Below, piece by piece: positions 13,119 to 51,439 of a DNA stretch of 64,000 bases; position 1 is the stretch's first letter; each line of letters starts with the position of its first letter. Both the position numbers and the translations under genes were made by a program. This DNA is from Lytechinus pictus (taxonomy: Eukaryota). The notes under the pieces are model-generated. The model worked only from the letters and a program-made list of their open reading frames with translations. It was not told the DNA's origin and did no database searches. The stretch spans positions 2,294,001-2,358,000 of the forward strand of contig NC_087252.1 in the NCBI RefSeq assembly GCF_037042905.1, read 5' to 3'.

Positions 13119-13324
13119 CACTCTTTATTAAAATGTTGGGCAACATACTGTCCGCGCAACAATAGGTTAAAAAATCGATCAAACTCTGGGTAGTTTTTAA
13201 CCAATACTGTGTAGTTTTCACAAAAAGTACACATTATTGCATGGTTTAAACCCACCCAGAATTGGAAAAAAGCTTTAGCCACTTGTTGTGTGGACAGTTT
13301 TATTGCCCAACATTTTTAAGAGTG
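13119..13324. mobile_element. CACT-terminated MITE (EnSpm/CACTA-like) with 2-bp TSD AA
   Basis: Inverted ends CACTCTT...AAAATGTTGGGCAA / TTGCCCAACATTTTTAAGAGTG, with AA on both flanks. Confidence 0.6.
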
Positions 13325-21765: not shown

Positions 21766-24700
21766 ATGAAATCAGTCCGAAGATTCGCAGGCCTTGTCAC
21801 ATTGGGAGGAATAGCATCTGTGTTGTTACTTCTGAACTTAAAAGATCCGACAACATTCAAACCTATAACGGAGGATAATAGCGAGAAAATTATAACACCT
21901 TCAGCACATCCATTGTAAGTAACTTGAGAAATCACCATCACAGTGGATATCATGAGGATGACATGCGTAAGAACCTGGGACTTACATAGTAAATAGCTGT
22001 TTAAAATTTAATACAAAGCTGTTTACAATATGGACCATCAGTATTTGTTTAAATAGTTACGATAAGCATGATAAGTGTTTTAAATCTTAAACCGAATAAA
22101 TTAAGCGTAGTTTAATTTGTGAAACAACTCTTGTTAGGTTTAATAGTGAACATCGTTTTAAAAATTTTAAACAGCGTTTTTACTCTGATAATCGAGGCCG
22201 GTCTCAAGGCGACATTGTGTCGTCTTTCGTCTTGGTCTCTATATGTGTAAAGTGTTCAAAGTCTATGGAATAATGCTTTCTCAAGCGACCTTGTGAGTCG
22301 GAAGTACCAGCCTTGACTTGCATGGTCAAAACCCTCTATATGACTTGAGCTTTAGGCTGTCATTGCCATTCAAACAATATCACAGCCATTCCCCTTGTAT
22401 ACGACAAATAAATGGGACATGCTTAAGGATGTGGTATCGGACTGTAACTATTACGTCACAATCTATCAAAAATTATCGATTGACTAATTATGTAAATTGG
22501 AATTCAACTCCTTATGAAATTTCAATATAAACTAATATATTTGTAGCAAACGATGCTTTCATTTTAAAATTGTCACCATAAAACATGTATAAAACATGTA
22601 TTTTGTATTTCTCCAAATCAAATATTAAGTCTCCTCACCACAAAGTCAAAGTAAAAATAAATAATTTATATTTGAACGTTTCAAAGTCAGTAAAATTCCT
22701 TGGAGTTTTACTGGATGATCAACTTTCTTTTCGAGACCATCGCATGAATTTACTTAATAAGATTTCCAAGAATGTTGGTATCATCAGTAAATTACGTTCT
22801 ATTTTACCCGAAAAACAATTATTTATGTTGTACAACTCACTTGTACTTCCTTTTATCTATTATTGTAATATTACTTGGGGAAACATAGGAAAAAATCAAT
22901 TAGAACCCTTTCATAAATTGCAGAAAAAAGCCTTACGTATCTGTACTAAATATTCCTATTATGCATCATCTGCCCCCCTCTTTTTTGAATTAAAAACACT
23001 AAATATTTATCATATTTATGAATTTAAAGTTGCAGTTTTGATGTATTATATTAAACAGGAAATGGCACCTGTAAACATAATGATTTTTTTAAATTATAAT
23101 AATGATTTTCACCAGTATAATACTCGTTCAGCTTCTCATTTTCATCTTCCACTGACCTCTAATAATCAAATTCATAATTCTTTTAAACATGCAGGACCTA
23201 GAATTTATAACAATTTAGATCCTATAATTCGTTCTTGTTCAACTGCCTCCTCATTTAAAATTTTACTTAAAAGACAATTAATTAGTGGTTATTCATCTTG
23301 ATTCCCTTTCCCTTTTCTAAACATACATGTGTACCCTCCTCCCCCCTCTCTCCTCTCTCTTTCTCTCTCTCTCCTTTGTTTGAGTGCAATGGGTCATGGA
23401 TGTGTGTTGGGTGTGGGTGATTCTGTGTTTGATGTATGAATATATAATGATTACGTTATGATTATTTGAATACCTGTAAAGGGGCAACTGCCTAACAAGA
23501 TTTTAATATTTTTGGTTGCCTCTTACCATATGTTGATTTTTCTTTTACATGAATGTATAAATTATATTTATTTGTTGTATATTAATTTTTTTTTGTATGT
23601 TTTGTCACATTTATGCATTTATATACATGTATTATGTTATTTTACATTGTATTTAAATATTTTTATATGGTTAATAAATGAATTGAATTGAATTGATGTC
23701 ATGGTAAATACAGATGGGGTTCGTTTCTTTAGATCTTGCTCGGTGAGAATTTTTTTTTTAATGAAATCTAATTTGAAAAAAAAAAAACAGAGTGAAGATT
23801 ACCAACTAAGAAAAGCACGCATGTGACAGTAAATTATCACTGCTTGAAACATAGGTCCGATATCTAGCTGAAATGCCATGAATGTGTTGTACATTTCTGA
23901 GAAATTAAACAACTTCTACCATTCTACGCCCCCCCCCCCCCGGGGGACCATGTTGACAAATATCAAACATGAAATATCTTTAGATTTACCCAAAATATAA
24001 TGGGGTTTTATTTTATTTTTTTTCTCCCTACAGTCGGATCGCACCAGGTTCTCTTCGACACCTTGCCAACGCCACAGCGAGCCAGGCCCATTCGGGTAAA
24101 GATGAAACCGGAACCTCTACTGAAAAAATAACACATTCCGACTCACCATCTAGTACGAACACGAGCAACGAACATGGGATCGTCGATAGATTTTTAAAAG
24201 ACCAACAGATCATTGGAAAAGACCCACATGGTGGGATGACGATCTCGGACACCCCGAGTCCCTCTTTGGGTAGACATGGGGACAACTCAAGTGGACCGGA
24301 AATGCGTGATGAAACTAAATGCATCCCTCGAAAGAACATGATGTACCTTAAAACTCACAAGACCGGGAGCTCTACATTACAGAATATCATTTATCGCTAT
24401 GGTGATGATCATGGGCTGACGTTTGCCCTTCCAAAAACAGGTGTATACCTTGGGACGCCCTCATTGTTCAAAAGGACATTTCCCATCCCGTCACCAACAG
24501 GAAAATACAACATGCTTGCTAATCATGCAAGATATAATCGTCACGGTGAGTATACCGTAAGGAGATATTGTAACCGCGACGCAGAACAAATTCAAGAACA
24601 TAAAAAATACGTGATCAAATACCCTTCGTGACAATGAACAACCAAGAAGTCTTTGTCGAGTACTGGGGAATCAAAATGGCAGTTTCGTTCTGAACTCTGG

Positions 24701-25933
24701 ACAAACGACAGAATTATTTGCGATTTTTCGTCAGATCAGAAACCTAGATTGAACTGCTGTTTCGGTTCGTTCTGCGTGGTGGTGCAAACAAATCCGCTAT
24801 TCAAGCAAACACAAAAAGTTATCAAAACGTTCTATTACCAAATAAACGTTCATAAGACGCTTAGACAACGTTTAAAACGCTTTGTGTTTGCTCTGTGATT
24901 AATTCATTTCAATGTATTTCCAATTTCTTTAACAAATGCGCATGCTAATTTTACCTTCTCTAGTGCTGAGTAGCTCCTATTTTAAATTGTATCTACATGT
25001 ATATTTTCAGAACTGCTTCTACAACTGCTGCTGCTGAAGTTTCTGACGTCAATAATGAAATTAAAACCTCGACTCGTAGCATTGAATAAAAGATTTGGCA
25101 GTGTATTCTAGAAGATAAGACAAAGTAGCCCTTATTTTTTTTAACATATTTCTTGAACTTTTATTCATATCTTATTATTCCCCTCTTTCACCATAGAAAT
25201 GGCGAAAATCATGTACAAGAACGCAGCGTATGTGACCATAATCCGGCATCCCTCAACTCAGTTTGAAAGTATGTATTCCTACTATGGATTTAAAGGTACC
25301 TTCAAGGTGGACCTTGAAGGGTTTGCGGACAAACCACAGAATTATTTTCGAAGACAGAGTACTACTCCTTCACATAGTGCCCTTAACCCAACGCTTTATG
25401 ACCTAGGAATGTCCAAACTGCAGATGAACAATGATGGCGCTATTCGGAATAAAATCACTACTTTGGGGAATGATTTCGATTTAGTCCTAGTTGCAGAGCA
25501 TCTTTTAGAATCGTTAGTTCTCTTAAAGGAGTTAATGTGCTGGGATTTGAGCGATGTGACGTTTTTCTCAGCCAATGCAAGAACGAAATCAGAAGTGGAC
25601 AAAATGTCCAAGAGAACGTTTGAACAACTTTACAAATGGAACCACGGTGATGCCCTTCTGTATGAACATTTTAACCAAACGCTTTGGACGAAGATAAAGG
25701 CATACGGTCAGGAAAGAATGGACAGAGACGTCAGGACGTTAGATAAAATGAACAAAGCACTAAAAGAAAAATGTCTTGATGGGACCAAAGCTGAAATGAG
25801 TGTCTCTGCATTAGTTAGCCGTTATGTTGTACGCCTAAGTATGAAGGATAACATTGAGTGCGTTAGAATGATCCGACCGGCCATTCAGTATCTAGAGTCA
25901 CTAAAAAAGAAACAAAGGATACCGGCTGGGTGA
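21766..25933 (+). CDS. Galactose-3-O-sulfotransferase-like type II membrane sulfotransferase, copy 1; exons 21766-21914, 24034-24545, 25197-25933
   Basis: N-terminal signal-anchor MKSVRRFAGLVTLGGIASVLLLL, 5'-PSB loop YLKTHKTGSST, 3'-PB motif IIRHPSTQFES, FDLVLVAE, and WNHGDALLYEHFN. Splice phases 2 and 1 join in frame at canonical sites. Confidence 0.88.
22585..23696 (+). mobile_element. 5'-truncated CR1/L2-group LINE (ORF2 C-terminus and 3' UTR) in the first coding intron of sulfotransferase copy 1
   Basis: ORF 22585-23301 contains VKFLGVLLDDQLSF, LYNSLVLPFIYYC..WG, LQKKALRIC and SAPLFFELKTL. The element ends with AATAAA followed by a (AATTG)n tail. Confidence 0.8.
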
Positions 25934-27882: not shown

Positions 27883-28045
27883 TACCATGGTCACATTTAC
27901 TCTACGGCGGCCGTACGGCGAGTCGAAAACAGCCGTTTTATTCATTTTTGTACAAACCACCTCTATGTAGCTCGTACATAAAATGTGAAACGGCTGTTTT
28001 TGACTCGCCGTACGGCCGCCGTAGAGCAAATGTGACCAAGGTATA
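27883..28045. mobile_element. ~160-bp hairpin MITE; related copies at ~42914-43160
   Basis: Arms GGTCACATTTACTCTACGGCGGCCGTACGGCGAGTCGAAAACAGCCG and its near-perfect reverse complement. Confidence 0.75.
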
Positions 28046-28870
28046 AGAGTCGAACTTAAATGTCCAGTTTCGTGCTGCATAAAAGGCCTTGCCGCATTGG
28101 TCAAATCGTGCAAAGAGGACGCGCTACTGCAGGTATATCATGGAGATAAAATTATATTTTACGAGAGGATGTACTCCTTCCAAATATGAACGATATGAAA
28201 CGCACAGCCTCCATCATCTTGAAGAGGGCAAATGGAAAAAAAAAAAAACATTGATCAATAATATGACTTTACATGATAATATCAGATTTTCACTGTTTTG
28301 CAATATATCTTTTTTTTAATTCAATGCTATATGCAGCGTGAAAATCACAAGCCCGAGCATCAAGGTATGTTCTTTGATAAAATGCGTACAGTTTCTTAAA
28401 TGAGATGGACTGAACCTCCAAAATAAGGGGGGGGGCGATAAGTGTAGAATAGATCCAATATGAGCATACTGTCTATGAGGGGAAAATCTTCTTTATATTA
28501 GGGAAAAGCATAAATGTGTGTAAAATATCTCTTACCAACCGAACAAAAATACATAGGCCAATTGCAAGCAAGATCCTTTTTGAATTGCCTTAAATTCGCA
28601 TTACAACCAATTTTTGATGCTTTAAGACAACATTAGGCAGAATATGAGAATTCATGACATTTTAACAGGGTCAATAGTGTTAATACAAAGCATCTGTATG
28701 GTGTAAATTCAAAAGCTTGTGCGTTACATATAATACGTGCGCGTCAGCAATGAGCATGACTCTAACCCACACTTAAGTCTTTGTGAAACACCTTTGTCAA
28801 AACGAACAGGATTTTTTTTTTTTTTTTTTTATTCAGACACGTGTACACGCAAGCCTCAATTATGCACAAT

Positions 28871-31800
28871 TAGTCCAGTCAATATAGGGTTTGACCCACC
28901 ACTAATTGCAACACTGGATATTCTACTGCAATGCTCTCCAGGAAGGTCCCCTTAACAACATACTAAAAGTCCCAAAATATCCAAGCAGTGGAAATTTATG
29001 AAATTTGCATATTATGCAAATTAGCCATAAAAAGTTTTTAAAAAATAAGGAAAATAGTTCAAAAATTACAAATTAAGTGTCCGAAACAATTTTATTTTAG
29101 CGAAAATTAATGATAAATAACTTTAATAAATGTTTTAATCAAAAGTGCAAAAAAATCTACCTCATTTGCATAATATGCAAATAAGCATCCTCATATGGAA
29201 AAAAAATCAAGATATTGTGATTTTTCTCTCATTGACTGCTTGAAAATTTCATTAATGTTGAAATTTACATGCTGCTATCACTAAGGACGTTGAATACATT
29301 TATATTAAGCTTAGTGTCTGTAGTGTCATTTGCATATTATGCAAATAAGTATCTAACATGTAATAAAATATTCAAGAAAACACACTGGTGATACATTCCT
29401 AAAAGATTGCAAGTAGATTATCTATTGAAATTGGAATATGGCAATGCCTTACAGGAAGTTAACACCATATTAAAAGTCATTAAATAGACAAGCATAGGAA
29501 AATCACAAAATTAGCATTTTATGCAAATTAGCCATAATAAGTTGCAAATGAGGAAATAACCAAAAATTTGGAAATCAAGTGCGGAAAACAATATAAATTG
29601 AACGGAAGCTCATGATAAGCTTTACAAATTTATTAATTCTTCAAATAAAAAAAATGTGAATAAATCTGCATCATTTGCATATATATGAGCATCCTTCAAT
29701 GAAAAAAAACCCAGAAATTTTGATTTTTCTCACACAAATAGATAAACCCCCATTCCACGGGGAGAAAGACCTCCGAAAGACTGCTGTAAGACCATAAAAC
29801 TTGCTTGATCTTTCAAGGGTCTTTCAACGAACTTTCAAAGATCTCCGAGGTCTTCCACGATTCCTAATAGATCTTTCAATGGTCTTTGTGGTCCTCGCAA
29901 GTCCCAAAACTTTTTGAAACGGTTCAAAACAGTCTTTCAGTGGTCTTACAGGAAAATTGTCTTTTGATTGTCTTTCAGTGGTCTTTCGATGAACTTTCAA
30001 GTTCATATTAGTCTTTCTATTATTTTTCGGCAGTCTCTCGAGATTTTTTCGGAGATTAAAGACTCATGAGAGATCATTGAAAGATCATCGAAAGATAATT
30101 GAAAGACCAGGCAAAGTCTATGGAAAGAATTCTGAAAGATCACTTGATGCATAAACGTCTCTTTCTCTTTGCGTTTCTTGCTAGTATAGTCCACGCTGGC
30201 ATGCTCCTTGATTGCCAAGTGATCAGCACAAGATGTCACACCCAGTACAAATAAAAGCTCGTTAGCTTCGAATATTTGGTCCTTGTAGCACACCACTTGT
30301 CTTGGTGGTGAATACGAGTACTTGCTTGGATCACGAGATCTCTGGGCATGGTTTTATAAGTACCAATGAGCATTTGCCCATATGAGCGACATGAAAGCCA
30401 TTCATAAAATCATGATAAAGGCTTAAATTGTATATAGAATATTTCTCAGATACAGGAATCATGATTAGACGTTCTTGCTGAATCCAGTTGCTGCTTCAGG
30501 ATGAAGCATCCATTTTCTGTTCTTTCCTCTTTGATGAATCTCCTAAGGATGACAACTATCTCAAAATATTGTAGCTATAGTTTATAAGCAAATCGTATGC
30601 AAATAAATAAATTTCCTGATATTTATGGCAAATGAAAATTCCTCAGTGAGACATTAAACAACCAAGTAGACGTTAACAGATGAAGGACTAAGCCAGATTA
30701 TTGCCTTTCCAACAAGAGGACACAACATAACGGAACACCCTTAACATCACGATCAAATACCATACAACAATGATTAAACAGTGTGTACCCATTCCAGGAT
30801 TTGTTTGCCACTTTGTGTTACTCATTGGTGTACTGTGAGGGTATACAGAGGAATAAACCTTTCAGAAATTATGGTACGACTAGGGTGTTCGTCTGGAGGA
30901 ATGCTGACTTTCATAGTGTCATGCAGATGTACTTTGGACAATCATACAACTCTCTGTACTGAAATCCGACAAGTCGAGCATAGGAGATTGAATACCAAGA
31001 GGACTTTGACAAGAACCAAACCATTACCCATGTCTTCTTCCGACACAAGTTCCCTCAATGAGGCACTGGACATAAGTTGTGTCGGAAGAAAAGTTTTATA
31101 GGAAGGCTTGCGCATATCAGAGCTCCAAAAGCATAAGTAAGGTGAAGCTCAGAATTGATACAATGCATTAAAGAGGATCATAAAATGGTTTGTAGACAAG
31201 CCTATAATACATAATTTGTTGACTGGATTGACAATGATCCAGGCTGTAACAATTAGCATGTTGGGAGCCCTCAATATAATGTGCTATGACTACATTGGAA
31301 TAGTATTATTAAAGGAAGGCAATAGATTTTTTTTTTGTCTTCATGGTCTTAGTATTTACCACTTATCATGACGATGATGATGATGCTAGCTGGTCTACAA
31401 GTCCTGGGACCCAGTCCTGACCCAGAAATGGCTAGATAACAAATTGTTTAGTCAAGCAGGTGTAGCCAAACTACTGAAGAAATTGTTAAAGAAAACAACC
31501 TGCATGAAGCTACTAGGTCAGATGGAATCTCTGCTACACTTCTTAATGAGACTACTCATCAGATCTTACCTGCCATAAGTTTGCTTTTCCTGGGCCCCCT
31601 CGTTAAACGGTGAAATTTCAAGAAAGTCTTTGTCGTTCCCATCCATACAAGAAAGGGTTGTCAACTCTTAAAAACTACACACCAATTCAAATACTGTGCT
31701 TTGTTCTTGCCAATCCCATCATCTTGTCAGACTAAGAACATTGCTTTAGGAAATGAAGTACATATTTCCAGTATTTTTCCTTTAATATATTAATTATATT

Positions 31801-32552
31801 AGGATAAATTTGCATGCTTAGAGATAGCAGAATATCAATTTGAACAACTGAAATGTTTTCACTGCAATCAATGTGAGAAAAATAAACATTTGACATTTTC
31901 CACTTATTTACATAAAATGTGAATAAGGCAGATTTGCTAGGCTTATTTTTAATAAAAACATTGTACCTATTTATTCATCATGGACTTTTGTTCAAATTAC
32001 TTTCTGTGGACATTTAATTAGTAATCTTGGGATTATTTTCCTTATTTTCTATTTTTCAATGGCTCAATTGCATAATATGCAAATTAATGTTGAGGAATGG
32101 AGATGAATTATCATGCTTAGTAATAGTAGCATGTAAATGCCAACATTAATGAAATGCTTTCAAGCAGTCTACCTGGTCTATATAAGAAAAATCACAATAT
32201 CTTGACATTTTCTTCACAAAAGGATGCTTCTTTGAATAATATGCAAATGAGGTAGATTTTTTAGCACTTTTGATTAAAAACATTGCATTTAGTTATTTAT
32301 AATGAACTTTCATTCAAATTAAATTGTTTTGGACACTTAATTTGTAATCTATGGACTAATTTCCTTCTTTTTCTAATTTTTTTAATGGCTAATTTGCATA
32401 ATATGCAAATTTCATAAATTTCCACTGCTTGGATTTTTGGGGACTTTTGGTATGTTGTTTAGGAGACCTTCCCGGAAAGAATTTCAGTGGAATATCCAGT
32501 GTTGCAATTAGTGGTGGGTTACCCCCCTATTCTGGCTAGATTGACTGGACTA
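28871..32552. mobile_element. Non-autonomous foldback DNA transposon, Academ-like termini (TAG...CTA, 3-bp TSD AAT)
   Basis: Ends TAGTCCAGTCAAT / ATTGACTGGACTA, AAT on both flanks (28868-28870 and 32553-32555), and imperfect inverted arms several hundred bp long. The interior holds unrelated repeats and a decayed RT-like stretch (KATRSDGISATLL near 31508). Confidence 0.7.
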
Positions 32553-34056
32553 AATGGCGGATCCCTTTGAGAACCATAATCAAAATTCGCAATTTGAGAA
32601 ATACCGATTTTACCCAAGTGTGTCCCCCTTGAAAGTGAAAACCTTCTTTTTTTCTTGTCTAATTTTCCACGAAAGAAATGACCTTCGATTTTAGGTGAAA
32701 TCTTTGTTTTTCTTTTTTTGTTTTGCTCGTCATATTTTCATCGGTAAAATGTGCCCCCTCCCTTTTGGAAAATCCTCATAACGCATTTTCATGTACTATG
32801 ATACAAGATAAATGAGCAATGTAAAAAAAGATGCCCCCTTTTCAGTTTTTCAAGAATGCATAAAGCCCTTTTTTAATGCATATACATGTAGCACTAAAAA
32901 CAACAACAAGAATGCTTATAGTATTCTCATTTATTTGAATATAACATAAAAGAACACAATCAGGCCACGGCGCCTCGACTCGAACCCCGGAAAAGATCGA
33001 TATTTTTTATTTATTTATTTATTTATTTTCCACTCGTGGGCTGGATGACCCTCTTCAGCCACAGGCTGTTCTTCTGAGGGGTCCAATACCGATTAACACC
33101 CTAGCCGTGTCTTTACCGTGTAGAATAGCTCTGTAGCAGGTCTCGGCATACATGGTAGTATAAGGGTTGGAGAATATGTAATGGTGATTATTATGTTTTT
33201 AACATTATACCTGACTCGTGATGTTATCATTGCATAATTCGATAGGTAAGTTCAATATAATGTGTGTGTTTTTTTTTGTGTGTGGGTTTGTGAGAGTATG
33301 TGTGTGTACACGTTTGGTTAGCTTTATTTGCATATCATGTGCAGTACGGGCATACTCCCAAGCTTTGCTTCTTAAGGGGCCCTAAAAACCGTTCATATAT
33401 ATCATCTTGGATCCATGTCACAATAAGTTGATATGATAGCGACCCTTGTTAGAATGTCAACTACCATGACAACAGTGAATGTTCTGCTTCCTAATTGGCT
33501 ATTCCAATCGTAGCTGGTATTTATCAAGAGCTGCTATCATATCATTTTTTTAATGGAATCATGATCATTATTTTTCCTTTTTAGTCATATGTCTTTGTTT
33601 AAACATATTAAACTTGAACTTATCGCGTGTATGACGTGAATAACAAATATAATGCTCCAGGCCCGATAAGAGTAGCCATGCTATAACGTCTGTGTAACAG
33701 TATGCAGTGTTTAGAAATATTGTATTAACAAGTGCTGCACAATCTTCTTATTCTTATTATAATTATTATTATCATTATTGTTATCATCGTCTTTATGATG
33801 AGCTCCATAACTAACTCCATAACTTAAAGAATGGTGTGGGGGTAAATCTAGTTCACCATAATGGCTCATGTATACTTTCCTCAGTAGTAGTAGTGGTGGT
33901 GGTAGAAGTAGTAGTAGGTGTGTTGCTAAACTTCGAGTCTCGAGTTTCAAGTTTCGAGTCTCGAGATTCGAGTATCAATTTTCGAGTCTCGAATTTTCAA
34001 AATCACATTGGAATTAGTCATTAAATACCGTCACTTTTCCTCGAGACTCGAAGTTT

Positions 34057-34982: not shown

Positions 34983-35502
34983 TCACCATTATTATCAGCA
35001 GGAGGACATGATATCAGCGCCAAAACAAGCCTTATCATTTATGTATCAATAATAAAAACAATAATAATAATGATGATAATAATAATAATATTAATAATAA
35101 TAATAATAATAATAAAAACGATAGTGGCTACTTATGTAGCGCACAGAACACTTTCACTGCTCATGGCGCTTCTAGAAAAAATAAATATACACGCAATTAT
35201 CATTGACCATGTTAATAATTCACTTCATTTTCGCTTATTTATGGTCGATTGTATTCAGGTTTGATGCGATGAACGCAGTCAGGAGGTTTGTGAGTGTTGT
35301 TGTATTAGGAGGAGTCGCATCGATGCTGCTGCTGTTCCTCGTTTCAAACATACCGACAAAGTTTATTAGTAGTTAAGGATGAGACCTCATACCTAATTGA
35401 CCTTTGAGTGACCTTTGACCCCAACTTCCGGTCACTGTTGACCCCGTGACCCCACCTTCCGGTCAATCATGACCTTTGACCTTTGGGTACGCGGTAAACA
35501 GG

Positions 35503-35762
35503 AAATTGGATAATGACTCCGCGTGGGGAAGCGATTTTAATTGGATAATGACTCCGCGCGGGAAGCGATTTTAATTGGATAATGAAGCGCGGGACGCGAT
35601 TTTAATTGGATAATGACTCCGCGTGGGGACGCCGTCTTAATTGGATAATGACTCCGCGTGGGGACGCGATTTTAATTGGATAATGACTCCGCGTGGGGAC
35701 GCCATCTTAATTGGATAATGAAGCGCGGGACGCGATTTTAATTGGATAATGACTCCGCGTGG
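35503..35762 (+). repeat. Subterminal ~30-35-bp tandem repeat (TTAATTGGATAATGACTCCGCGTGGGGACGC...), about 8 units; about 5 inverted units at ~40085-40230
   Basis: Repeated ATTGGATAATG core read directly. Confidence 0.9.
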
Positions 35763-36677
35763 ACGGATATGTCAAGCGCCTCGCATGACGTCACCGGCTA
35801 CGCAAGCACCGTGATGTCATCCCAGGGAATTACCCTTATCCCACCGTATCGCTATTGAACCACCGTGGCGCAATCGTCACGTATAGGATACGATGCACAA
35901 AACAGACGTATGATATACACAGTTAATTCCTATTGTAACGGTTCTTTCTCCGCCTACCAGCAGATATGTCAAGTGCCTCGCGGTTCACGAATCGAGCACC
36001 CCACTCACAACCAACGCGCGTCATTGAACTTGTGATATCCTATTGGAAAGGTGAAAACCGACTCTCTGCCTCTTATTACAACAATGATTGGTAATCCAAC
36101 ATGTGATTATAATAGTGACATCTCAAGCTCTACTCATTCCAGACTTTTACACATCAAAACTCTCTGACTTTTCCATACTGTTTTGTACATACTTCCATAC
36201 TTTTCATTTTAACTCACATGACCTGCACGGCTCTCTGACTCGCAAAAGTATACTACATGCATATTTAAACCAGTAGATGACTCCTTTCAATCAACTTCAT
36301 TCATCCGCAGTACAGATGGTGATAACATGAAACACTATACAGTCAAGGATGATTATTTTATTATTATTATCATTTATTCTATTCCATTTCAATGTAGATA
36401 GGTTCAGATAGTGTATAAACAGCAGATTTTGATACAAAGGTAAAAATAATGTAAGATATGTTCTCAAATTACGTTGTCACAACAAAATAATTAACTGTTC
36501 ATTGTTAATATTAAAGTGAAGTTCTCGTTTTTCTATTTCTTCGCTTAACTTAATGGATTGTAACACATGTCTATGGATGGCATTCAGAAAATATGAACAC
36601 AATGAAGTTCAAACTGTCATTTATGTTGACGGCGTTTTCTTGGATTATTATTATTCGACAAGCTGATGTTTGTGCCT

Positions 36678-37325
36678 TTAGTTGTAGGTTCCATCTTCAC
36701 CCTCTGTTTCTTCTCCACCATCATTATCGTCATCGTCACCTTGATACTGGAATAAACCATCGAATTGTGAACCATGCCTGGCAAACACTCTCTGTACGGC
36801 TTTCCGGAATTCCATGCCATTCTCTAATCTTTCCGTGAGATCGGACACGATTTCGTGATTGATGTCAGCGTCTTCGAGGTACACGTTCTGCTGCAAGAAC
36901 TGAGAGTACAGATCGAAAAAGATGCGTTTGACTGCCCACATTAGTTTCACGTGAGCCTTTGCTTTAGCGTCTTCTTCTTCCATTCCTTCTGAGATGTATT
37001 TCTGATATTTTTCGTCTCTCAAGTCCTTGGTGGCCGTCATGGCTTGCTCTAACCATCCTCGATAAGCGAGGTTGTCTTCAGTTTCTTCCATGTTTGCTGT
37101 CATTGACGATTCGTGTCCATCGCTTTCTGATACGCTCGTTTCGGAATCACCGTTGGATTCTTCAACTCTTTGCATTTGAGAGGATGGGTCGGATTCTTCA
37201 TCTTCACTCGTTTCTTCTCCAGTATCATGCTCAATTTGTTCATGCCTCTGCATGTTATATTTCCTACTAAAAGTTTTATCGCATCGTGAACAAGCGTAAC
37301 GGTTGGACATATCCAATATATTCAT
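36678..37325 (-). CDS. Element-borne protein: single C2H2 zinc finger, acidic linker, helical domain, acidic tail (left-arm copy)
   Basis: YACSRCDKTFSRKYNMQRHEQIEH matches C-x2-C-x12-H-x4-H. The ORF is intact and intronless. The first ATG (MNILDMSNRY) was used in place of the TTG start in the ORF track. Confidence 0.75.
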   Translation of the reverse strand: MNILDMSNRYACSRCDKTFSRKYNMQRHEQIEHDTGEETSEDEESDPSSQMQRVEESNGDSETSVSESDGHESSMTANMEETEDNLAYRGWLEQAMTATKDLRDEKYQKYISEGMEEEDAKAKAHVKLMWAVKRIFFDLYSQFLQQNVYLEDADINHEIVSDLTERLENGMEFRKAVQRVFARHGSQFDGLFQYQGDDDDNDGGEETEGEDGTYN

Positions 37326-37417
37326 GCTGACTCGATGATTATTTGTTGGGAAATGAAGAAAATTAACGTTCAAACTTGTAATTATACGTAATCATGAAAC
37401 GCGCGCGAAGGTACTTT

Positions 37418-38378
37418 GATTCTTACGGATTTTTACGCATTCTTACGGATTCTTACTCATTCTTACGGATTCTTACGGATGTTTACTCATTCTTACTCAT
37501 TCTTACTCATTCTTACGGATTTTTTACGGATTCTTACGGATGTTTACGGATTCTTACGGATGTTTACGGCTTCTTACGGATGTTTACGGATTCTTACTCA
37601 TTCTTACGGATTCTTACTCATTCTTACTCATTCTTACGGATTCTTACGGATGTTTACGGATTCTTACGGATGTTTACGGATTCTTACGGATTCTTACTCA
37701 TTCTTACTCATTCTTACGGATGTTTACTCATTCTTACTCATTCTTACTCATTCTTACTCATTCTTACGGATTTTTTACGGATTCTTACGGATGTTTACGG
37801 ATTCTTACGGATGTTTACTCATTCTTACTCATTCTTACTCATTCTTACGGATTCTTACTCATTCTTACGGATTTTTTACGGATTCTTACGGATGTTTACG
37901 GATTCTTACTCATTCTTACGGATTCTTACTCATTCTTACGGATGTTTACGGATTCTTACGGATGTTTACGGATTCTTACGGATGTTTACTCATTCTTACG
38001 GATGTTTACGGATTCTTACGGATGTTTACGGATTCTTACGGATGTTTACGGATTCTTACGGATGTTTACTCATTCTTACGGATTCTTACGGATGTTTACT
38101 CATTCTTACGGATTTTTTACGGATTCTTACGGATGTTTAGCGTGGATGAACATATTTTCCTTGAGATTATATGAAGGCATTGATTAATCCGTAAGAATCC
38201 GTAAGAATGAGTAAACATCCGTAAGAATCCGTAAGAATGAGTAAGAATCCGTAAGAATCCGTAAACATCCGTAAGAATCCGTAAACATCCGTAAGAATGA
38301 GTAAACATCCGTAAGAATCCGTAAGAATGAGTAAGAATCCGTAAGAATCCGTAAGAATGAGTAAGAATCCATAAGAAT
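37418..38378. repeat. Central 10-bp variant minisatellite: forward block ~37418-38138, ~48-bp unique spacer, inverted block ~38187-38378
   Basis: Units GGATTCTTAC, GGATGTTTAC, TCATTCTTAC and an occasional 11-bp GGATTTTTTAC. Confidence 0.95.
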
Positions 38379-38471
38379 CAAAGTACCTTCGCGCGCGTTT
38401 CATGATTACGTATAATTACAAGTTTGAACGTTAATTTTCTTCATTTCCCAACAAATAATCATCGAGTCAGC

Positions 38472-39122
38472 ATGAATATATTGGATATGTCCAACCGTTA
38501 CGCTTGTTCACGATGCGATAAAACTTTTAGTAGGAAATATAACATGCAGAGGCATGAACAAATTGAGCATGATACTGGAGAAGAAACGAGTGAAGATGAA
38601 GAATCCGACCCATCCTCTCAAATGCAAAGAGTTGAAGAATCCAACGGTGATTCCGAAACGAGCGTATCAGAAAGCGATGGACACGAATCGTCAATGACAG
38701 CAAACATGGAAGAAACTGAAGACAACCTCGCTTATCGAGGATGGTTAGAGCAAGCCATGACGGCCACCAAGGACTTGAGAGACGAAAAATATCAGAAATA
38801 CATCTCAGAAGGAATGGAAGAAGAAGACGCTAAAGCAAAGGCTCACGTGAAACTAATGTGGGCAGTCAAACGCATCTTTTTCGATCTGTACTCTCAGTTC
38901 TTGCAGCAGAACGTGTACCTCGAAGACGCTGACATCAATCATGAAATCGTGTCCGATCTCACGGAAAGATTAGAGAATGGCATGGAATTCCGGAAAGCCG
39001 TACAGAGAGTGTTAGCCAGGCATGGTTCACAATTCGATGGTTTATTCCAGTATCAAGGTGACGATGACGATAATGATGATGGTGGAGAAGAAACGGAGGG
39101 TGAAGATGGAACCTACAACTAA
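38472..39122 (+). CDS. Element-borne C2H2-finger/acidic protein (right-arm copy)
   Basis: Identical to the left-arm protein except F/L in VFARH/VLARH and one extra Asp. AATAAA at ~39430. Confidence 0.75.
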   Translation: MNILDMSNRYACSRCDKTFSRKYNMQRHEQIEHDTGEETSEDEESDPSSQMQRVEESNGDSETSVSESDGHESSMTANMEETEDNLAYRGWLEQAMTATKDLRDEKYQKYISEGMEEEDAKAKAHVKLMWAVKRIFFDLYSQFLQQNVYLEDADINHEIVSDLTERLENGMEFRKAVQRVLARHGSQFDGLFQYQGDDDDNDDGGEETEGEDGTYN

Positions 39123-41380
39123 AGGCACAAACATCAGCTTGTCGAATAATCCAAGAAAACGCCGTCAACATAAATGCGGGCATAAATGACAGTTTGAACT
39201 TCATTGTGTTCATATTTTCTGAATGCCATCCATAGACATGTGTTACAATCCATTAAGTTAAGCGAAGGAAAAGAAAAAAACGAGAACTTCACTTTAATAT
39301 TAACAATGAACAGTTAATTATTTTGTTGTGACAACGTAATTTGAGAACATATCTTACATTATTTTTACCTTTGTATCAAAATCTGCTGTTTATACACTAA
39401 TTGAACCTATCTACATTGAAATGGAATAGAATAAATGATAGTAATAATAAAGAATCATCCTTGACTGTATAGTGTTTCATGTTATCACCATCTGTACTGC
39501 GGATGAATGAAGTTGATTGAAAGGAGTCGTCTACGGGTTTCAATATAGTATACTTTTGCGGGTCAGAGAGCCGTGCAGGTCATGTGAGTTAAAATGAAAA
39601 GTATGGAGGTATGTACAAAACAGTATGGAAAAGTCAGAGAGTTTTGATGGGGGAAAGTCTGGAATGAGTAGAGCTTGAGATGCCACTGTTATCAGGATTA
39701 TAATCACATGTTGGATTACCAATAATTGTTGTAATAAGAGGCAGAGAGAGCCGGCTTTCACCTTGAATAGGATATCCCAAGTTCAATGACGGGCGTTGGT
39801 CGTGAGTGGGGTGATCGATTCGTGAACCGCGAGGCACTTGACATATCGGGTTCGACATATCTGCTGGTAGGCATAGAAAGATAATTTTTTCAATAGGAAA
39901 CTGTGTAGAAATCATACGTCTGTTTCGTGCATCGTATCCTATACGTGACGATTGCGCCACGGTGGTGCAATACCGATACGATGGGATAAGGGGAATTCCC
40001 TGGGATGACATCACGGTGCTTACGTAGCCGGTGACGTCATGCGCGCGGAGGTTAATTAAATTTCCTGTAGATCGAGTCCCTACGTGGACTCATATCCAAT
40101 TAAGATGGCGTCCCCACGCGGAGTCATTATCCAATTAAGACGGCGTCCCCGCGCTTCATTATCCAATTAAAATCGCGTCCCGCGCTCCATTATCCAATTA
40201 AAATCGCTTCCCGCGCTCCATTATCCAATTTCCTGTTTACCGCGTACCCAAAGGTCAAAGGTCATGATTGACCGGAAGGTGGGGTCACGGGGTCAACAGT
40301 GACCGGAAGTTGGGGTCAAAGGTCACTCAAAGGTCAATTAGGTATGAGGTCTCATCCTTAACTACTTTTATTCTTCCAAGACATAGTGATGCCAATGGCG
40401 AAGCAAGATTTACAGCATATTCAGCAAATCAAGGGTAAGTGCTTATTACTTCAGTGATATTGTTGGACATTGTACTTTTTTCGTCACCCTAAAACGTAGG
40501 CCTATGGGGGAGGGGTCATCGACCCCGCCACCGTCCAAAAAAAAAATCCCCGACCGTTCCGCTGTCTTACGTTTTCTAAGCATCTTTTCAAACCCGTTGG
40601 TCTCACTTTTATATATGAAACGTGGAAGACAATACCTCCATCCCCCCCCCCACCGAAAAGTAAAACGAATTAAATTAAGTCCGGGACCAACATTTCTTAG
40701 ATTTTAGATTCTGGCTGCGAATATTACCCGTGTTTGAGTCGATCATAGTTTTCGATCAAATACTGTCTTTGATATATCTTCCATTTCAGCTGACAATAAA
40801 TTTAAAATTGTAAGGTACACACCTTTTTTATTAATTACCAAGCATAATGCGGGTTTTCTTTGCCCTATCAACTTTTCTCTCCAGTCGGACCGCACGAGGT
40901 TCTCTTCGATACCCCGACAACGTCACAGTGAGTCTGGCCCATTCAGCTGAACATGTAGTTGCAGGAGCTTCTAACCAAACGAAAACCAGTTTTGATTTCT
41001 TCTTCAGTGCCAACACGAGCACCCAACCTAGCAGCGTCGGTGAATTTGAAAAAGAAAAACTAGGTGGGATGACGAGTGCAGACACCATTAGCCCTTCTGG
41101 ACAGGAGAGGCATGATGAAACTAGATGCGTCCCACGAGAAAATATAATGTACCTCAAAACCCACAAGACCGGGAGCTCTACATTACAGAATATCATTTAT
41201 CGCTATGGTGATGCTCATGGGCTGACGTTTGCCCTACCAAAAACAGGTGTACATCTTGGGACGCCCTCATTGTTCAACCGGACTCATCCTGTCAAGTCGC
41301 CCTCAGGAAAATACAACATACTTGCCAATCATGCAAGATATAACCGTCCCGGTGAGTAGATACTAAAAGCTCTTGCATTT

Positions 41381-41841: not shown

Positions 41842-44800
41842 CTAAGGGCATCGATTCCTTTGAAATGCAATTAAAATCACAATGGAGAGCTGAGAGGCTG
41901 TTGTCTAAAGTTGGTGGACTGGGACAGCAGATCATCCGAATATTTGCCGCGGACGAACAATTGCAAATATGTCAGCCAGAGTCATGTTATGACAATGCTG
42001 AACTTGCATTTTCAAAGGAATTGGTGCGTCGTAAAGAGTTTCCCAGACTTTCCCCCGTAGTAAATGCGAAAAGTCCAGAGTAATACAATGACTACAATCA
42101 CTTTCTGTCAACGCTACTATACAATACAAATCGGACACATCCGAGAATGAATCAACAATTGAAGAGTCTAGTTGAAAAGGGGTGAGGTCAACTTTGGACC
42201 ATTCCGAGAAAACAAAACATGTTTGTTATTCTCACTTACGGCAATATTCTTAAGAGAAACTAAATTGTCATGATGTACTACCCTATCATGTAAACATAAA
42301 ACTGGATATAAATATATATTTACCTGTCTTCAATTTTTTCTGTATAGATTTTTTTTCTATATATCATTGTAGACCTAACCCCTTTTGCAAGCAAACTGTA
42401 ATGAATTCAATCTCTTTTGATTAAAAAAGGTGATTTTATTCTTTGCCAATTTCATTCACGTTTTCATTTAAAATTCAATGTTTTGTATCATCAGGCCGAC
42501 TAAAAATTTAGAGGTTGAGAGACAAAAACAATAAAATTAAGGAAAAATGGACCTAACCCCATTTTACAAATGAGTTCTTCAGAAGAGTTTAGTTGCAAAA
42601 GGGGTTATGTCCACTCTAAGCAAATTTTTTTTTTAATTCTCCCATATTGCATTATTCTTATGTGAAACTGAATTTTCATAATACCCTACCATGAGAACAT
42701 AACATTGAGTGTAAAAGAAATCGTCCTGTCTTCATATTTTATAAGATATTCTTTTCCAAAAAAAATATGTTTGGACCTAACCCCTTTTGCCATTTTAGTT
42801 CACTTTTTAATGGGAATTTCATCTTTTCTTTGGTATCATCTTATAAAGCTACTAAAAATGTATACAAGATCTAATCAAATTTGATGAAAAATGGACCTAA
42901 CCCAAAGAGTTGTGCCGTACGGCCGCCGGAGAGCAAATGTGACCGAGGTATAAATCATGAAACAAATTATTTACCAAGGCTTCGTGATCTGTCATGAGAG
43001 GTGGGCTCGGTCACATTTGCCACGGCGGCCGCAGTCGAAAACAGTCGTTTGAACATTTTTTGTACCAGCTACAAATAGCTTGTTTGAAAAAAAAATCAAT
43101 TAAACGGCTGTTTTCGACTCGCCGTACGGCCGCCGGAGAGCAAATTTGACCGAGGTGTAAATCATGAAACAAATTATTTTATCCCTACAACCATATATGC
43201 AATCAAAATTCAAATGCCTTCGTCCATTGGTTTTATGAGGGAGACGCAACTAAAGCACGTCAGAAATAACTTTTTTCTTACTACGGAAACAGTGTCGACG
43301 CTATTGGTCCGATTTCGCAAAGTTGGTGTTGGGAATGCGTGGTTTTAAACCTTGGTTAGGTAGATGTCTCTGTGTTGATTACGCTTATTCATCGCGTATG
43401 TCGAGATAATAAATATATGCTTACATCGCAGGTATGTTTAATGGACCATTCGTAATATTAGGTTACATCATTAGCCCATTGTTTTAAATATAACGCGTCA
43501 ACTATTTGTATTATTTATTTGCATTCTTTAATAGTAGGATGAATAATTGCGATAACTTAAGTTAAAACCGTCAGTTCTGATCACGCTCTCTCACGGAAGC
43601 GAAATCGCGCATTCATTACTGGACACTTTTTTCCATCATGTTTATATTGTATACGCGCTGAATTACGCGGGCGGATTCAAAACCACCTTTATGATTCCGG
43701 CCATCTTGCTTTGATCTCCAACTGTCCCTATACTAATTTTGCCTTATTATCCATATTTTCAGATCTTTTGAAATATGTTAACTATACATACGACTGCCTA
43801 CGTTTCTGTTTGTCAATAATGCACGCAAGTTGCATGTGTCTACATGGTACATACATATTCTCCAGCCCGATATGTACTATGCGTTTTGTCATTTTGCCTT
43901 ATCCTTCTAATTCAATAATTGAAGAATTATGAAACTAATTATAAACAATATATTGAAAAATTGCTTTCAAATAAAATATAAATAATTGTACATACTATTT
44001 CTTTTTAAAAACCAAGATTTCTCCATCGTCGGTTTCATTTTCATCTAATAAATCATGTTTTTAAAAATGACATCCGAAAGGATACCATGCTTTTTTACCT
44101 CTCTTTTCCAACTGAATCTTTGGAAGAAGGTAATGCTAATACCGAGCATTAGATTAAAAAAAAGTTACCTGTTTTATATTTTTCATCAAGTGAGTGTACT
44201 TATTTTAATCTAATGCATAAAATAAAATAAAACAGAGGCAATGCGCCTGCGAAGAGATATCTATTACCAAATCAAATATTTTATAAAATACATTTTCGTT
44301 TTTTCTTTCACCATAGAAATGGCCGAGATCATGTACAAGAACGCAGCATATGTGACCATCATCCGGCATCCCTCCACCCAGTTTGAAAGTATGTATGCCT
44401 ACTATGGATTCCAACGTAACTTCAATGTGACCTTGAAAGGGTTTGCGGACAAACCACAGACATATTATAGAAGAGAGATAACTGATCCACACCACACCGC
44501 ACTCAACCCGACGCTGTATGACCTAGGAATGCACAAACAGGAAATGGCCGATGAGGGCGGTATTCGGAATAAAATTGCTACTTTGGAGGATGATTTCGAT
44601 TTAGTCCTAGTTGCAGAGTATCTTTTGGAATCCTTAGTCCTCTTGAGAGAGTTAATGTGTTGGGATTTGAGCGATATGACCTACTTCTCATCCAGAGTAA
44701 GAACGAAATCAGAAGAGGACAAGATGTCCGAGAGAACGTTTGAACAACTTTACAAATGGAATCATGGTGATGCCCTTCTTTATGAACATTTTAACCGAAC

Positions 44801-46026
44801 GCTGTGGACAAAAATAAAGGTGTATGGTCAGAAAAGGATGGAAATCGATGTGATGAAGTTAGAAAAAATGATCAAAGCACTAAAAGACAAATGTCTGGAT
44901 GGGACCACATTTTTTAAAAAGGTCACTCACTATGTTCTAAGAGAAAGTATGAGGGACAATGTCCAGTGCATTAGAATGATTAGACCTGCTTTTAAATATC
45001 TACAAACACTCAGAGAGAAGCAAGGAATACCGATTGGTTAAAAGTTTGAAACTATATCGTTGCTTTACAAGAATGTTTGTTAGCCAGTTATCCATTTCTT
45101 TAACAGGGCTATAAATTCATGTTGTTTGTTAATTAATTTTGACCATTTTCTCTTTTATGATGGTTTACGTTTCTATTTATTATTTTTTTTCACAAGGACC
45201 TTATGCATGTGACGTCATAATCTCAAAGCGCCCTCCTACAGAGGAAATGGGAATATGCGTGAATGTAGTTTTCAGAGATGTGCCAGCTGCACATCACCAA
45301 GGCACGCAAGGCAACATCAGTGAAAATATCCTTTAAAATGGCGGCACGGTGATGCCGATGTATAAGGTCTATTCATAATACGCATATTCGCCCACACACA
45401 CCCACCCACACACACGCACACACCAATATGTATTATGTATTATTGTGTCACGTTTGGGATAAGTCTTTACATGTGGTTGCTATGCGACCATTTGGAGCGT
45501 TTTGCTATTGTATTGTGTATTGATAATGACGCTCAATAAATATTGCAATAAATAAAAGCGTGAAAGGTAGCTGCAAACCTAAAACCTCTTACAAGTGTGA
45601 CGTACAACATTTGGTAAATATACATTAAACAATCCATGAAAAATACAAGATCAACAACATTGAAGTCAAGGGATTAAATACATGTACTATGGTCTTGGTG
45701 TTAACAGCAATTCGTTAATTAATATTTTAAATTCCGACAGATCTGGGACAGATTTTATCTATAAAAAAAAACGATATTCCAAATATAAGCCCATCATAGC
45801 TTCATTAGAGTTAGAAGTACAAAATTTATGTACATATTGGTTATCGAACACCCTTGAAATAAGAGTAACCAATATGTCGAAGAAAACGGGATTGCTGTTA
45901 TAATACATATATACACATTGAACTCTTCTGTAGTAAATCGAGGCTGCTCCGAATATCTATGAAGATTGTACATATATATGAAGATTTGTGTATTTGCGTA
46001 TTTGTGTTACATTCATTCATTATTCA

Positions 46027-50580: not shown

Positions 50581-51174
50581 TTAAAAAGGAAAATGAAACC
50601 TTTGGATCAAGATAGCTTGTGGGAAAACAGAAAACAGAAAAAATCAAATCAACGAAAGTTTGAAAAAAAATCTAACAAATAATGATAAAGTTATGAGCAT
50701 TTGAATACTGCGATTACTAATGCTATGAAGATCATCCAATTGGCAATGCGACAAAGATGTGTGATGTCACTTGTTAACAACTTTCCCAGTACTTTTGTAT
50801 ATATTTCACTTAAACTGCCTCTTTTATCACATCTATCAGTAGATCATGCATTCTTTCTATAGGAGGGCATGTAATACAATTTTCGAAGAAAACATTATGG
50901 ATAAAGAGTTTGTATCACCATGAGAAAGAACTAAAAGATACATTTTGTGGGTATTTTATAGTCCATTAAAGAGAAAGTTGTTCACATGTGACATCATACA
51001 TCATTGTCGCATTGCCATTGGGAGGATCTCTATAGCATTAGTGATCGCAATATTCAAATGCTCATAACTTTCTGATTATTTGTCTGATTTTTCTCAAATT
51101 TTCTTTGTTCTTATTCTTTGATCTTTCTCTTTCAAAACAAGTCCACATGTTCCAAGGGTTTCATTCCCCTTTAA
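50581..51174. mobile_element. TTAA-flanked foldback MITE (Kolobok/piggyBac-type target); related copy at 53688-54281, duplicate at 63303-63896
   Basis: Ends TTAA-AAAGGAAAATGAAACC / GGTTTCATTCCCCT-TTAA, with inverted arms containing GTTATGAGCATTTGAAT...CTAATGCTAT. Confidence 0.7.
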
Positions 51175-51224
51175 TGATTGGCTAATTATTCATCACGATA
51201 TCTACATCGTCATGATAAAGGATA

Positions 51225-51439
51225 CACTCTAAGAACACTGAGTAAAATGTTTTACCCAATTTTGGGCAGAAAGGGAACTTGCTGATGCATGTTTGCTGGG
51301 CTTTTTTTTAAAACCCCATTTTGTGCTATTTCAACGCAACTTTGCGTAAAATTCACAAAACATTTGGTATCCGTTTATCCAACCAACATGTATGTTCCCA
51401 TTTTTGCCAATATTGCATGGGTAAACCTTTTTTAGAGTG
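51225..51439. mobile_element. CACT-terminated MITE with TA on both flanks
   Basis: TA-CACTCTAA ... TTAGAGTG-TA. Confidence 0.55.

What the first reader, a model, noticed from the sequence alone, without database searches (positions are those of the whole stretch)
35269..40434. The element splits the signal-anchor exon of a sulfotransferase gene; the pre-insertion exon can be rebuilt exactly
Seen: MNAVRRFVSVVVLGGVASMLLLFLVSNIPTKFI precedes the left end. LPRHSDANGEARFTAYSANQG plus a GTAAGT donor follows the right TSD, in the same frame and with the same phase-2 intron as paralog copy 1. The element's own terminus reads AGT AGT TAA and truncates the protein at 35 aa, while exons 2-3 have no stops. 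The ORF track misses this exon entirely. Inference: a very recent, probably polymorphic knockout, implying Polinton-type integrase activity in this lineage.
Basis: partly seen in the sequence, partly recalled or inferred. Interest (0 to 1): 0.75.

Follow-up and report, generated by a model that had tools for sequence, protein, structure and literature searches.

The report
Transposon splits sea urchin sulfotransferase exon
In the painted sea urchin Lytechinus pictus, a 5-kb gene-poor mobile element with the ends typical of Maverick/Polinton virus-like transposons sits in the first coding exon of a Golgi-type sulfotransferase gene, while the sister species has the exon uninterrupted: a clear but fairly ordinary lineage-specific insertion that breaks the gene's normal start.

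Summary
The window is Lytechinus pictus (CM073233.1). A 4,999-bp element (35368-40366) with ends AGTAGT...ACTACT and a perfect 6-bp duplication (TTTATT) splits exon 1 of a galactose-3-O-sulfotransferase gene. The reading frame stops two codons into the element, giving 35 aa. The right piece, exon 2 and exon 3 are open (1,254 nt, no stops). The L. variegatus ortholog has the exon contiguous with one TTTATT and no element, so the insertion is specific to the L. pictus lineage. Polarised substitutions show the gene stayed under constraint for most of that branch. Whether it is polymorphic, and how it is transcribed, could not be tested.

The element is not an autonomous Polinton. It has no polymerase, integrase or capsid genes. 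About 90% of it is two inverted arms, each carrying one conserved zinc-finger gene. It does have the commonest Maverick end motif and the 6-bp duplication, as do two relatives. Its gene is homologous to the C-terminal module of A32-like packaging-ATPase proteins, whose ATPase domain is 45% identical to that of a contig with a Polinton-type gene set. The best reading is a non-autonomous Maverick/Polinton derivative integrated in trans.

The parts
35269..35367 (+). Sulfotransferase copy 2, exon 1, left piece: ATG plus 33 codons with the hydrophobic signal-anchor segment. Its last 6 nt are the left copy of the target duplication.
   Evidence: Kyte-Doolittle 19-aa window over aa 7-25 averages 2.69. 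Aligns to L003 10001-10096.
35362..35367 (.). Left copy of the 6-bp target-site duplication TTTATT
   Evidence: Present once in L. variegatus at L003 10091-10096.
35368..40366 (.). Inserted element, 4,999 bp, ends AGTAGT...ACTACT. No polymerase, integrase or capsid ORF.
   Evidence: No match in the L. variegatus locus.
35368..37417 (.). Left inverted arm, from the terminus to the start of the 10-bp array. It holds two TGACCTTTGACC motifs near the end and 31-35-bp tandem repeats at 35504-35762.
   Evidence: Versus the right arm: 1,878 matches, 65 mismatches and 151 gap columns, unevenly spread.
36678..37373 (-). Zinc-finger gene, left-arm copy, intact. 231 aa as a mechanical ORF; the likely ATG is at 37325. 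It reads outward toward the left end.
37418..38379 (.). Centre of the element: 10-bp tandem arrays at 37418-38134 and, inverted, at 38186-38379, around a 51-bp spacer.
38424..39122 (+). Zinc-finger gene, right-arm copy, intact. 232 aa as a mechanical ORF; the likely ATG is at 38472. It reads outward toward the right end and the host gene's downstream exons.
38380..40366 (.). Right inverted arm, with subterminal tandem repeats at 40069-40230 and two TGACCTTTGACC motifs near the end.
40367..40372 (.). Right copy of the 6-bp target-site duplication TTTATT
40373..40434 (+). Sulfotransferase copy 2, exon 1, right piece: 20 codons plus 2 nt, followed by a GTAAGT donor at 40435.
40885..41351 (+). Sulfotransferase copy 2, exon 2. 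It contains the internal Met at which the public annotation starts.
44317..45041 (+). Sulfotransferase copy 2, exon 3, running to the stop codon.
21766..25933 (+). Paralog copy 1, with exons at 21766-21914, 24034-24545 and 25197-25933. It encodes 465 aa, is uninterrupted, and has the same intron phases.

Best explanation
A non-autonomous derivative of a Maverick/Polinton-type virus-like transposon integrated into the first coding exon of a galactose-3-O-sulfotransferase gene. This happened in the L. pictus lineage, after its split from L. variegatus. Shown: the element's bounds, the 6-bp target duplication, the uninterrupted site in the sister species, and the premature stop two codons into the element. 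The product is cut to 35 aa, and the signal anchor is separated from the catalytic exons. Inferred: the element has no enzymes of its own, so copying from its AGT-repeat ends and insertion with a 6-bp staggered cut were done by proteins supplied by an autonomous Polinton in the same genome. Those proteins would be a protein-primed polymerase and a retrovirus-like integrase. Also inferred: the near-palindromic build (one ~2-kb end unit present twice, inverted) fits a strand-switch or snap-back product of such linear replication. The allele most likely no longer makes the membrane-anchored enzyme. The insertion is young relative to the species split, because the downstream exons are still open and still carry the signature of selection.
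For: Insertion and empty site. P0019 translates exactly from L003 exons 10001-10158, 10613-11079 and 13121-13845. Gene identity: PF06990, E 1e-21 to 1e-51. A signal anchor occurs only in the left piece; the annotated L. pictus product P0018 (335 aa) has none. Timing: 0 stops in 1,254 nt. Lp-Lv dS is 0.13 and omega 0.42. For exon 3, the L. pictus branch has 7 synonymous and 6 non-synonymous changes against a neutral expectation of about 1:4 (binomial P = 0.007). The L. variegatus branch has 5 and 10. Maverick-type signature: ends (AGT)2//(ACT)2 with a perfect 6-bp duplication. PMC8097293 describes this as the commonest Maverick end motif and says the repeat serves 'jumping back' in protein-primed replication. 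A ~90% identical L. pictus copy (L001 6640-12779) has the same ends and the duplication AAAGCA. A distant relative (L002 3884-12561) has AGAG...CTCT ends and the duplication GTAGTA. Gene link: the profile of the element's protein matches 380-560-aa single-ORF proteins built as zinc finger + Pox_A32 ATPase + zinc finger + helical domain (hhalign 99.8%, E 7e-30, onto the C-terminal module). The ATPase part of one such protein is 45% identical (E 1e-52) to the ATPase of a 12.3-kb linear contig. That contig also encodes an rve-chromo integrase, an adenovirus-type protease and an 1,157-aa ORF. The element's gene is under purifying selection (omega 0.14 at dS 0.86).
Against: None of the genes that define a Polinton is in the element. 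No autonomous partner with the same ends was seen, because no tool here searches the sea urchin genome by DNA. The two arms are mosaic: the inner ~550 bp are identical and 35618-36117 is ~10% mismatched. They therefore give no date, and the snap-back origin remains conjecture. The window copy and the L001 copy differ by ~9%, so there is no sign of a burst of identical copies. Loss of function is inferred from sequence and from the public gene model, not from transcripts.
Confidence: 0.72

Rival explanations
1. The element belongs to another transposon group that also makes 6-bp duplications (IS3EU/GingerRoot), or to a foldback-type family moved by an unknown cut-and-paste transposase. On this reading the Maverick-like ends are coincidental.
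For: No integrase or polymerase gene in the element. Very long, internally repetitive inverted arms, as in foldback elements, which are known in sea urchins. IS3EU/GingerRoot also make 6-bp duplications.
Against: IS3EU/GingerRoot ends are TA..TA or TG..CA (PMC10045372). This family has AGTAGT..ACTACT or AGAG..CTCT ends. Foldback elements with known duplications make 8-10 bp. The element's gene is homologous to part of an A32-type packaging-ATPase protein.
Confidence: 0.12
2. The gene is not knocked out. Transcripts may bypass the element through another first exon, cryptic splicing, or a start inside the element, so the insertion would be tolerated or even regulatory.
For: Exons 2-3 are intact and constrained. 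Elsewhere in L. pictus, annotated proteins P0013 and P0015 start with the element's zinc-finger N-terminus and continue into host enzyme exons. A zebrafish non-autonomous Polinton is reported as an alternative promoter (PMC9341505).
Against: The public model for this locus begins at an internal Met and has no hydrophobic anchor. The frame that reads from the element's right end into the right exon piece has no ATG. Of the two splice donors implied by the chimeras, one is absent from this copy. The other is phase 0 and would be out of frame with the phase-2 exon 2 (inference). No L. pictus protein with an intact N-terminus is in the protein collection.
Confidence: 0.15
3. The insertion is old and fixed, and the gene is a long-dead pseudogene.
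For: Only one assembly was seen. Copy 2 has a higher omega (0.27-0.42) than copy 1 exon 3 (0.09).
Against: No stop or frameshift in 1,254 nt. The L. pictus branch is significantly short of non-synonymous changes relative to neutrality (P = 0.007) and is no worse than the L. variegatus branch. The duplication is perfect. The element is absent from the sister species.
Confidence: 0.08
4. The junctions are an assembly artefact, or the element was ancestral and was lost precisely in L. variegatus.
For: An N run lies 386 bp upstream of the ATG. The window also holds a 99.99% identical 7.3-kb duplicate, which may be an assembly duplication.
Against: Both junctions are exact element ends flanked by the same hexamer. 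The same 10.8 kb is in the public record at 100%. Paralog copy 1 and the L. variegatus ortholog are both contiguous at the homologous position.
Confidence: 0.03

Closest known systems
Maverick/Polinton virus-like transposons (e.g. sea urchin Polinton-1_SP, named in PMC3014272; vertebrate Mavericks, PMC8097293)
   Same: Perfect 6-bp target duplication. Terminal inverted repeats. The 5'-(AGT)2//(ACT)2-3' end motif, with an (AG)n//(CT)n variant in a relative. The gene module is homologous to part of an A32-like packaging-ATPase protein.
   Different: 5 kb instead of about 13-25 kb. No protein-primed polymerase, integrase, capsid proteins, protease or ATPase domain. The inverted arms take up about 90% of the element. 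The single gene is present twice and reads outward.
Non-autonomous Polintons catalogued in repeat libraries (e.g. Polinton-1N1_DR of zebrafish, named in PMC9341505)
   Same: A short, enzyme-less element with Polinton-type ends, presumably moved in trans. It can sit at the 5' end of host genes and affect their transcripts.
   Different: No library sequence was at hand, so relatedness could not be checked. This family keeps a selected protein-coding gene (omega 0.14), which a simple deletion derivative need not do.
Foldback transposons (Drosophila FB and Tetris; sea urchin elements of Liebermann et al. 1983, cited in PMC4079207)
   Same: Very long inverted arms with subterminal and inner tandem repeats, a short middle, and occurrence in sea urchins.
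   Different: Foldback elements with known duplications make 8-10 bp and are assigned to the Mutator or P groups. Here the duplication is 6 bp with Maverick end motifs. The old sea urchin papers were not readable in the library.
Galactose-3-O-sulfotransferases (Pfam PF06990; annotated 'galactosylceramide sulfotransferase-like')
   Same: The catalytic exons match the family at E down to 1e-51. The N-terminus has an Arg-Arg motif followed by a hydrophobic segment, as expected for a type II Golgi enzyme (established knowledge).
   Different: In this L. pictus allele the anchor-coding part is cut off from the rest by the element.

Membership tests
Polinton/Maverick (autonomous) | 6-bp target-site duplication | tested here: met
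   TTTATT in the window. AAAGCA in L001. GTAGTA in L002. The feature is as stated in PMC3014272 and PMC8097293.
Polinton/Maverick (autonomous) | Terminal inverted repeats with short repeated end motif (AGT)2//(ACT)2 or (AG)3//(CT)3 | tested here: met
   AGTAGT...ACTACT in the window and L001. AGAGAA...TTCTCT in L002. Motifs are as described in PMC8097293.
Polinton/Maverick (autonomous) | [quoted passage not shown] | tested here: not met
   No such ORF or Pfam hit in 35368-40366. Required by definition according to PMC5499653.
Polinton/Maverick (autonomous) | Encodes a retrovirus-like (rve) integrase | tested here: not met
   None in the element. The only rve in the window belongs to an LTR-type pol ORF at 36-2417.
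Polinton/Maverick (autonomous) | Morphogenetic module (major and minor capsid proteins, packaging ATPase, protease) | tested here: not met
   Absent. Only the C-terminal, non-ATPase module of a zinc-finger/A32-ATPase protein family has a homolog here.
Non-autonomous Polinton/Maverick derivative | Polinton-type ends and duplication without the enzymes | tested here: met
   See the rows above.
Non-autonomous Polinton/Maverick derivative | Internal sequence derived from a Polinton | tested here: inconclusive
   The gene is homologous (hhalign 99.8%, E 7e-30) to the C-terminal module of proteins carrying a Pox_A32 ATPase. The ATPase of one of these proteins is 45% identical to that of a contig with integrase, protease and a large ORF. 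The genomic context of the long proteins themselves was not seen.
Non-autonomous Polinton/Maverick derivative | An autonomous partner with matching ends in the same genome | not testable with these tools
IS3EU/GingerRoot | 6-bp duplication with TA..TA (occasionally TG..CA) termini | tested here: not met
   The duplication length fits. The termini are AG..CT in all three insertions.
Foldback elements | Long internally repetitive inverted arms with 8-10-bp duplications | tested here: not met
   The arms fit. The duplication is 6 bp.
Gal-3-O-sulfotransferase (PF06990) | Match to the family profile above the curated cut-off | tested here: met
   Exon 2 scores 77 bits and exon 3 scores 160 bits against a cut-off of 27. 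P0019 scores 259 bits.

The most novel reading that the evidence does not exclude
The element represents a distinct, widespread echinoid family of 'satellite' Maverick derivatives. These would be snap-back, foldback-like elements that have shed all enzymes. They keep, in both arms and under selection, an outward-reading gene derived from the zinc-finger/helical tail of the packaging-ATPase protein. They may depend on this gene to hijack a helper Polinton, and by reading outward they repeatedly create chimeric transcripts with host genes.
Probability: 0.25. Interest if true: 0.6.

Novelty: new member of a known kind. Interest (0 to 1): 0.42.

Why it matters
It gives a clean, datable case of Maverick/Polinton-type integration in a laboratory sea urchin since its split from L. 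variegatus. This implies that the trans-acting machinery was active in that lineage. The insertion removes the membrane anchor from one of two tandem sulfotransferase paralogs. If it is polymorphic in L. pictus, it is a natural loss-of-function allele in a species now used for genetics. The element also shows that enzyme-less derivatives of these virus-like transposons can retain a selected gene related to the packaging-ATPase protein. That is a lead on how such derivatives persist.

Tried and rejected
- Exact-sequence look-ups of both zinc-finger ORFs found nothing.
- Contigs of four more distant relatives came without DNA and showed no Polinton genes nearby.
- P0013 is not on record.
- The unplaced L. 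pictus scaffold L005 holds a ~90% diverged copy-1 region. It has no copy-2 exon 1 within 10 kb, so it says nothing about polymorphism.
- Searches with exon 3 and exon 2 found no L. pictus protein with an intact N-terminus and no transcript-derived fragment.
- The zinc-finger protein has no relative in IMG/VR.
- Its predicted fold is a zinc finger, a disordered acidic linker and a helical domain (mean pLDDT 64). It has no significant match in PDB or BFVD. Sequence search of PDB gives only C2H2 fingers.
- There are no Rfam families in the region.
- Arm-to-arm divergence was rejected as a clock because it is mosaic.
- The ORF next to the ATPase in L006 is not related to the element's protein.
- The ends of a second inverted pair in L002 could not be resolved.
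- No figure for the L. pictus/L. variegatus divergence time was found, so timing is given in substitutions only.
- Slip: one search printed the lengths of stop-free segments of a broken relative ORF in L002, which amounts to the places of its breaks. I stopped, used none of it, and give only the count: at least one in-frame stop.
- I did not read the L. pictus record (L004) where the window has N runs.


Full report
**Origin.** The window is Lytechinus pictus. A 10.8-kb stretch is 100% identical to GCA_037042905.1 CM073233.1. The exon-3 ORF is 100% identical to the annotated L. pictus protein P0018.

**The observation.** The sulfotransferase start codon is at 35269. Thirty-three codons follow, with an Arg-Arg motif and a strongly hydrophobic segment (Kyte-Doolittle mean 2.69 over aa 7-25). 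The sequence then continues into AGT AGT TAA at 35368. The same 26 nt occur inverted at 40341-40366 and nowhere else in the window. TTTATT lies directly outside both ends.

After the right-hand hexamer, 62 nt stay open in the same frame and end at a GTAAGT donor at 40435. The acceptor at 40884/40885 continues the frame into exon 2. Paralog copy 1 has a 149-nt exon 1 with a GTAAGT donor and the same phase. Its three exons join to an open 465-aa protein. In copy 2, the right piece, exon 2 and exon 3, joined at introns shared with the paralog and the ortholog, give 1,254 nt without an internal stop. Exons 2 and 3 match Pfam PF06990, galactose-3-O-sulfotransferase.

**The empty site.** I looked for natural relatives instead. 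The L. variegatus ortholog P0019 (449 aa, 91% identical in exon 3) has an uninterrupted N-terminus covering both pieces.

In its locus L003, the window's left flank aligns up to position 10096 and the right flank from 10091. The hexamer therefore occurs once, and the 5-kb element has no match there. The three L003 exons translate exactly to P0019, and the two window pieces abut at 10096/10097. The insertion arose on the L. pictus side, or is still segregating there.

**Timing.**
- Between the two species, copy 2 has dS 0.13 and omega 0.42. For exon 3 alone, dS is 0.157 and omega 0.27.
- With copy 1 as outgroup, exon-3 changes on the L. pictus branch are 7 synonymous and 6 non-synonymous. On the L. 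variegatus branch they are 5 and 10.
- Against a neutral expectation of about four non-synonymous per synonymous change, the L. pictus branch is depleted (P = 0.007).
- The gene was therefore constrained for most of that branch. The insertion is late relative to the split, or the gene still works.
- The inverted arms cannot date the event. The inner ~550 bp are identical, a middle stretch is ~10% mismatched, and the outer 250 bp differ by 1.4%.
- Polymorphism could not be tested. The only other L. pictus scaffold found is a diverged copy-1 region. No L. pictus protein or fragment with the intact N-terminus is in the collections.

**Consequence for the gene.** The canonical ORF ends after 35 aa. 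The public annotation starts at an internal Met of exon 2. Its 335-aa product has no hydrophobic anchor (best window 0.2). For a family of type II Golgi enzymes (established knowledge), that predicts loss of normal targeting. No transcript data were available.

**The element.**
- It is 4,999 bp long. Arms of about 2.0-2.2 kb are inverted copies of each other (1,878 matches, 65 mismatches, 151 gap columns).
- From each end inward come the AGTAGT terminus, two TGACCTTTGACC motifs, 31-35-bp tandem repeats and about 1 kb without recognisable genes. Next is a 231/232-aa gene reading outward, then a 10-bp tandem array. The two arrays meet around a 51-bp spacer.
- There is no polymerase, integrase, capsid, protease or ATPase ORF.

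**The element's gene.**
- The protein has one C2H2 zinc finger, an acidic disordered linker and a helical domain. It has no fold match.
- The two copies differ by three substitutions and one codion-length indel (one codon).
- Against a distant family member, omega is 0.14 at dS 0.86, so the protein has been under selection.
- Relatives are annotated in L. pictus and occur on contigs of other samples.

**Is it Polinton-type?** Three independent lines say the ends and the origin are.

1. The ends are the commonest Maverick end motif, (AGT)2//(ACT)2, with a perfect 6-bp duplication. The literature links the repeat to jumping-back during protein-primed replication (PMC8097293).
2. The signature recurs. 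A ~90% identical L. pictus copy (L001 6640-12779) has the same ends and the duplication AAAGCA. A distant relative (L002 3884-12561, with a nested LINE) has AGAG...CTCT ends and the duplication GTAGTA. The other eukaryotic group with 6-bp duplications, IS3EU/GingerRoot, has TA..TA ends (PMC10045372). Foldback elements make 8-10 bp (PMC4079207).
3. A profile of the element's protein, searched without length limits, finds 45 clusters at E <= 1e-30. It also finds longer single-ORF proteins (380-560 aa) built as zinc finger + Pox_A32-type ATPase + second zinc finger + the same helical domain. Profile-profile comparison aligns the element's protein to that C-terminal module (99.8%, E 7e-30). Only that module matches the window. 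The ATPase domain of one long protein is 45% identical (E 1e-52) to the ATPase of a 12.3-kb linear contig with inverted ends (L006). That contig also encodes an rve-chromodomain integrase, an adenovirus-type protease and an 1,157-aa ORF, which is a Polinton-type set.

By definition, Polintons encode the polymerase and the integrase (PMC5499653). This element is therefore not a Polinton. It is best filed as a non-autonomous derivative, a kind already catalogued elsewhere (Polinton-1N1_DR). Mobilisation in trans and the snap-back origin of the palindrome are inferences. No helper element was seen.

**Verdict.** This is a well-documented lineage-specific insertion of a known general kind, with an unusual element architecture.

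Noticed in passing
window 43937-51278 and 56658-64000: A 7.3-kb stretch is repeated 12,721 bp downstream at 99.986% identity (one mismatch). It holds sulfotransferase exon 3 and two leucine-rich-repeat ORFs (352 and 590 aa). It is either a very young tandem duplication or an assembly duplication. The second copy has exon 3 but no exons 1-2 in front of it.
   Followed up: partly
L. pictus proteins P0013 and P0015 (loci not retrievable): Two annotated L. pictus proteins begin with the element family's zinc-finger N-terminus. They continue into host enzyme domains: a sialyltransferase (PF00777) and a kinase (PF01636). The outward-reading gene of this family therefore seems to be spliced into host genes at other loci.
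   Followed up: partly
window 35409, 35470, 40253, 40314: TGACCTTTGACC occurs four times in the window, all within about 110 bp of the element's two ends. The motif is a direct repeat of a nuclear-receptor-type half-site with one-base spacing. It may be a protein-binding site. This was not tested.
   Followed up: no
window 36-2417: An open pol fragment of a retrotransposon has the rve integrase and its SH3-like domain upstream of the reverse transcriptase and RNase H. That order is unusual for Gypsy-type elements.
   Followed up: no
L005 (unplaced scaffold JAZDCF010000024.1) versus window 19397-32961: The same assembly holds a second copy-1-like region at 82-97% DNA identity. It lacks the LINE fragment that lies in intron 1 of the window's copy (22580-23695). 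Its protein P0020 is 93% identical to the window's copy 1. P0020 and the window's copy 1 are each ~89% identical to L. variegatus P0021. It is either a diverged haplotype or a recent paralog.
   Followed up: partly
window 35368-37417 versus 38380-40366: Identity between the two arms is mosaic. It is 100% over the inner ~550 bp, which includes most of the gene, and about 90% in 35618-36117. This suggests conversion between arms or recombination among family members.
   Followed up: partly
L001 6640-12779: The L. pictus sister copy of the element is rearranged. It has one full and two partial copies of the zinc-finger gene, and the annotated protein P0001 repeats a segment. It lies between a cytosolic sulfotransferase gene and an fn3-domain gene.
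   Followed up: no
L006 (IMGVR_UViG_3300040792_000067): This is a 12.3-kb metagenomic linear contig with inverted ends. It encodes an 1,157-aa ORF with no Pfam hit, an A32/IVa2-type ATPase, an rve-chromodomain integrase and an adenovirus-type protease. It looks like a complete or near-complete Polinton-type genome. Its ATPase is 45% identical to that of one of the long zinc-finger-ATPase proteins (P0157).
   Followed up: partly
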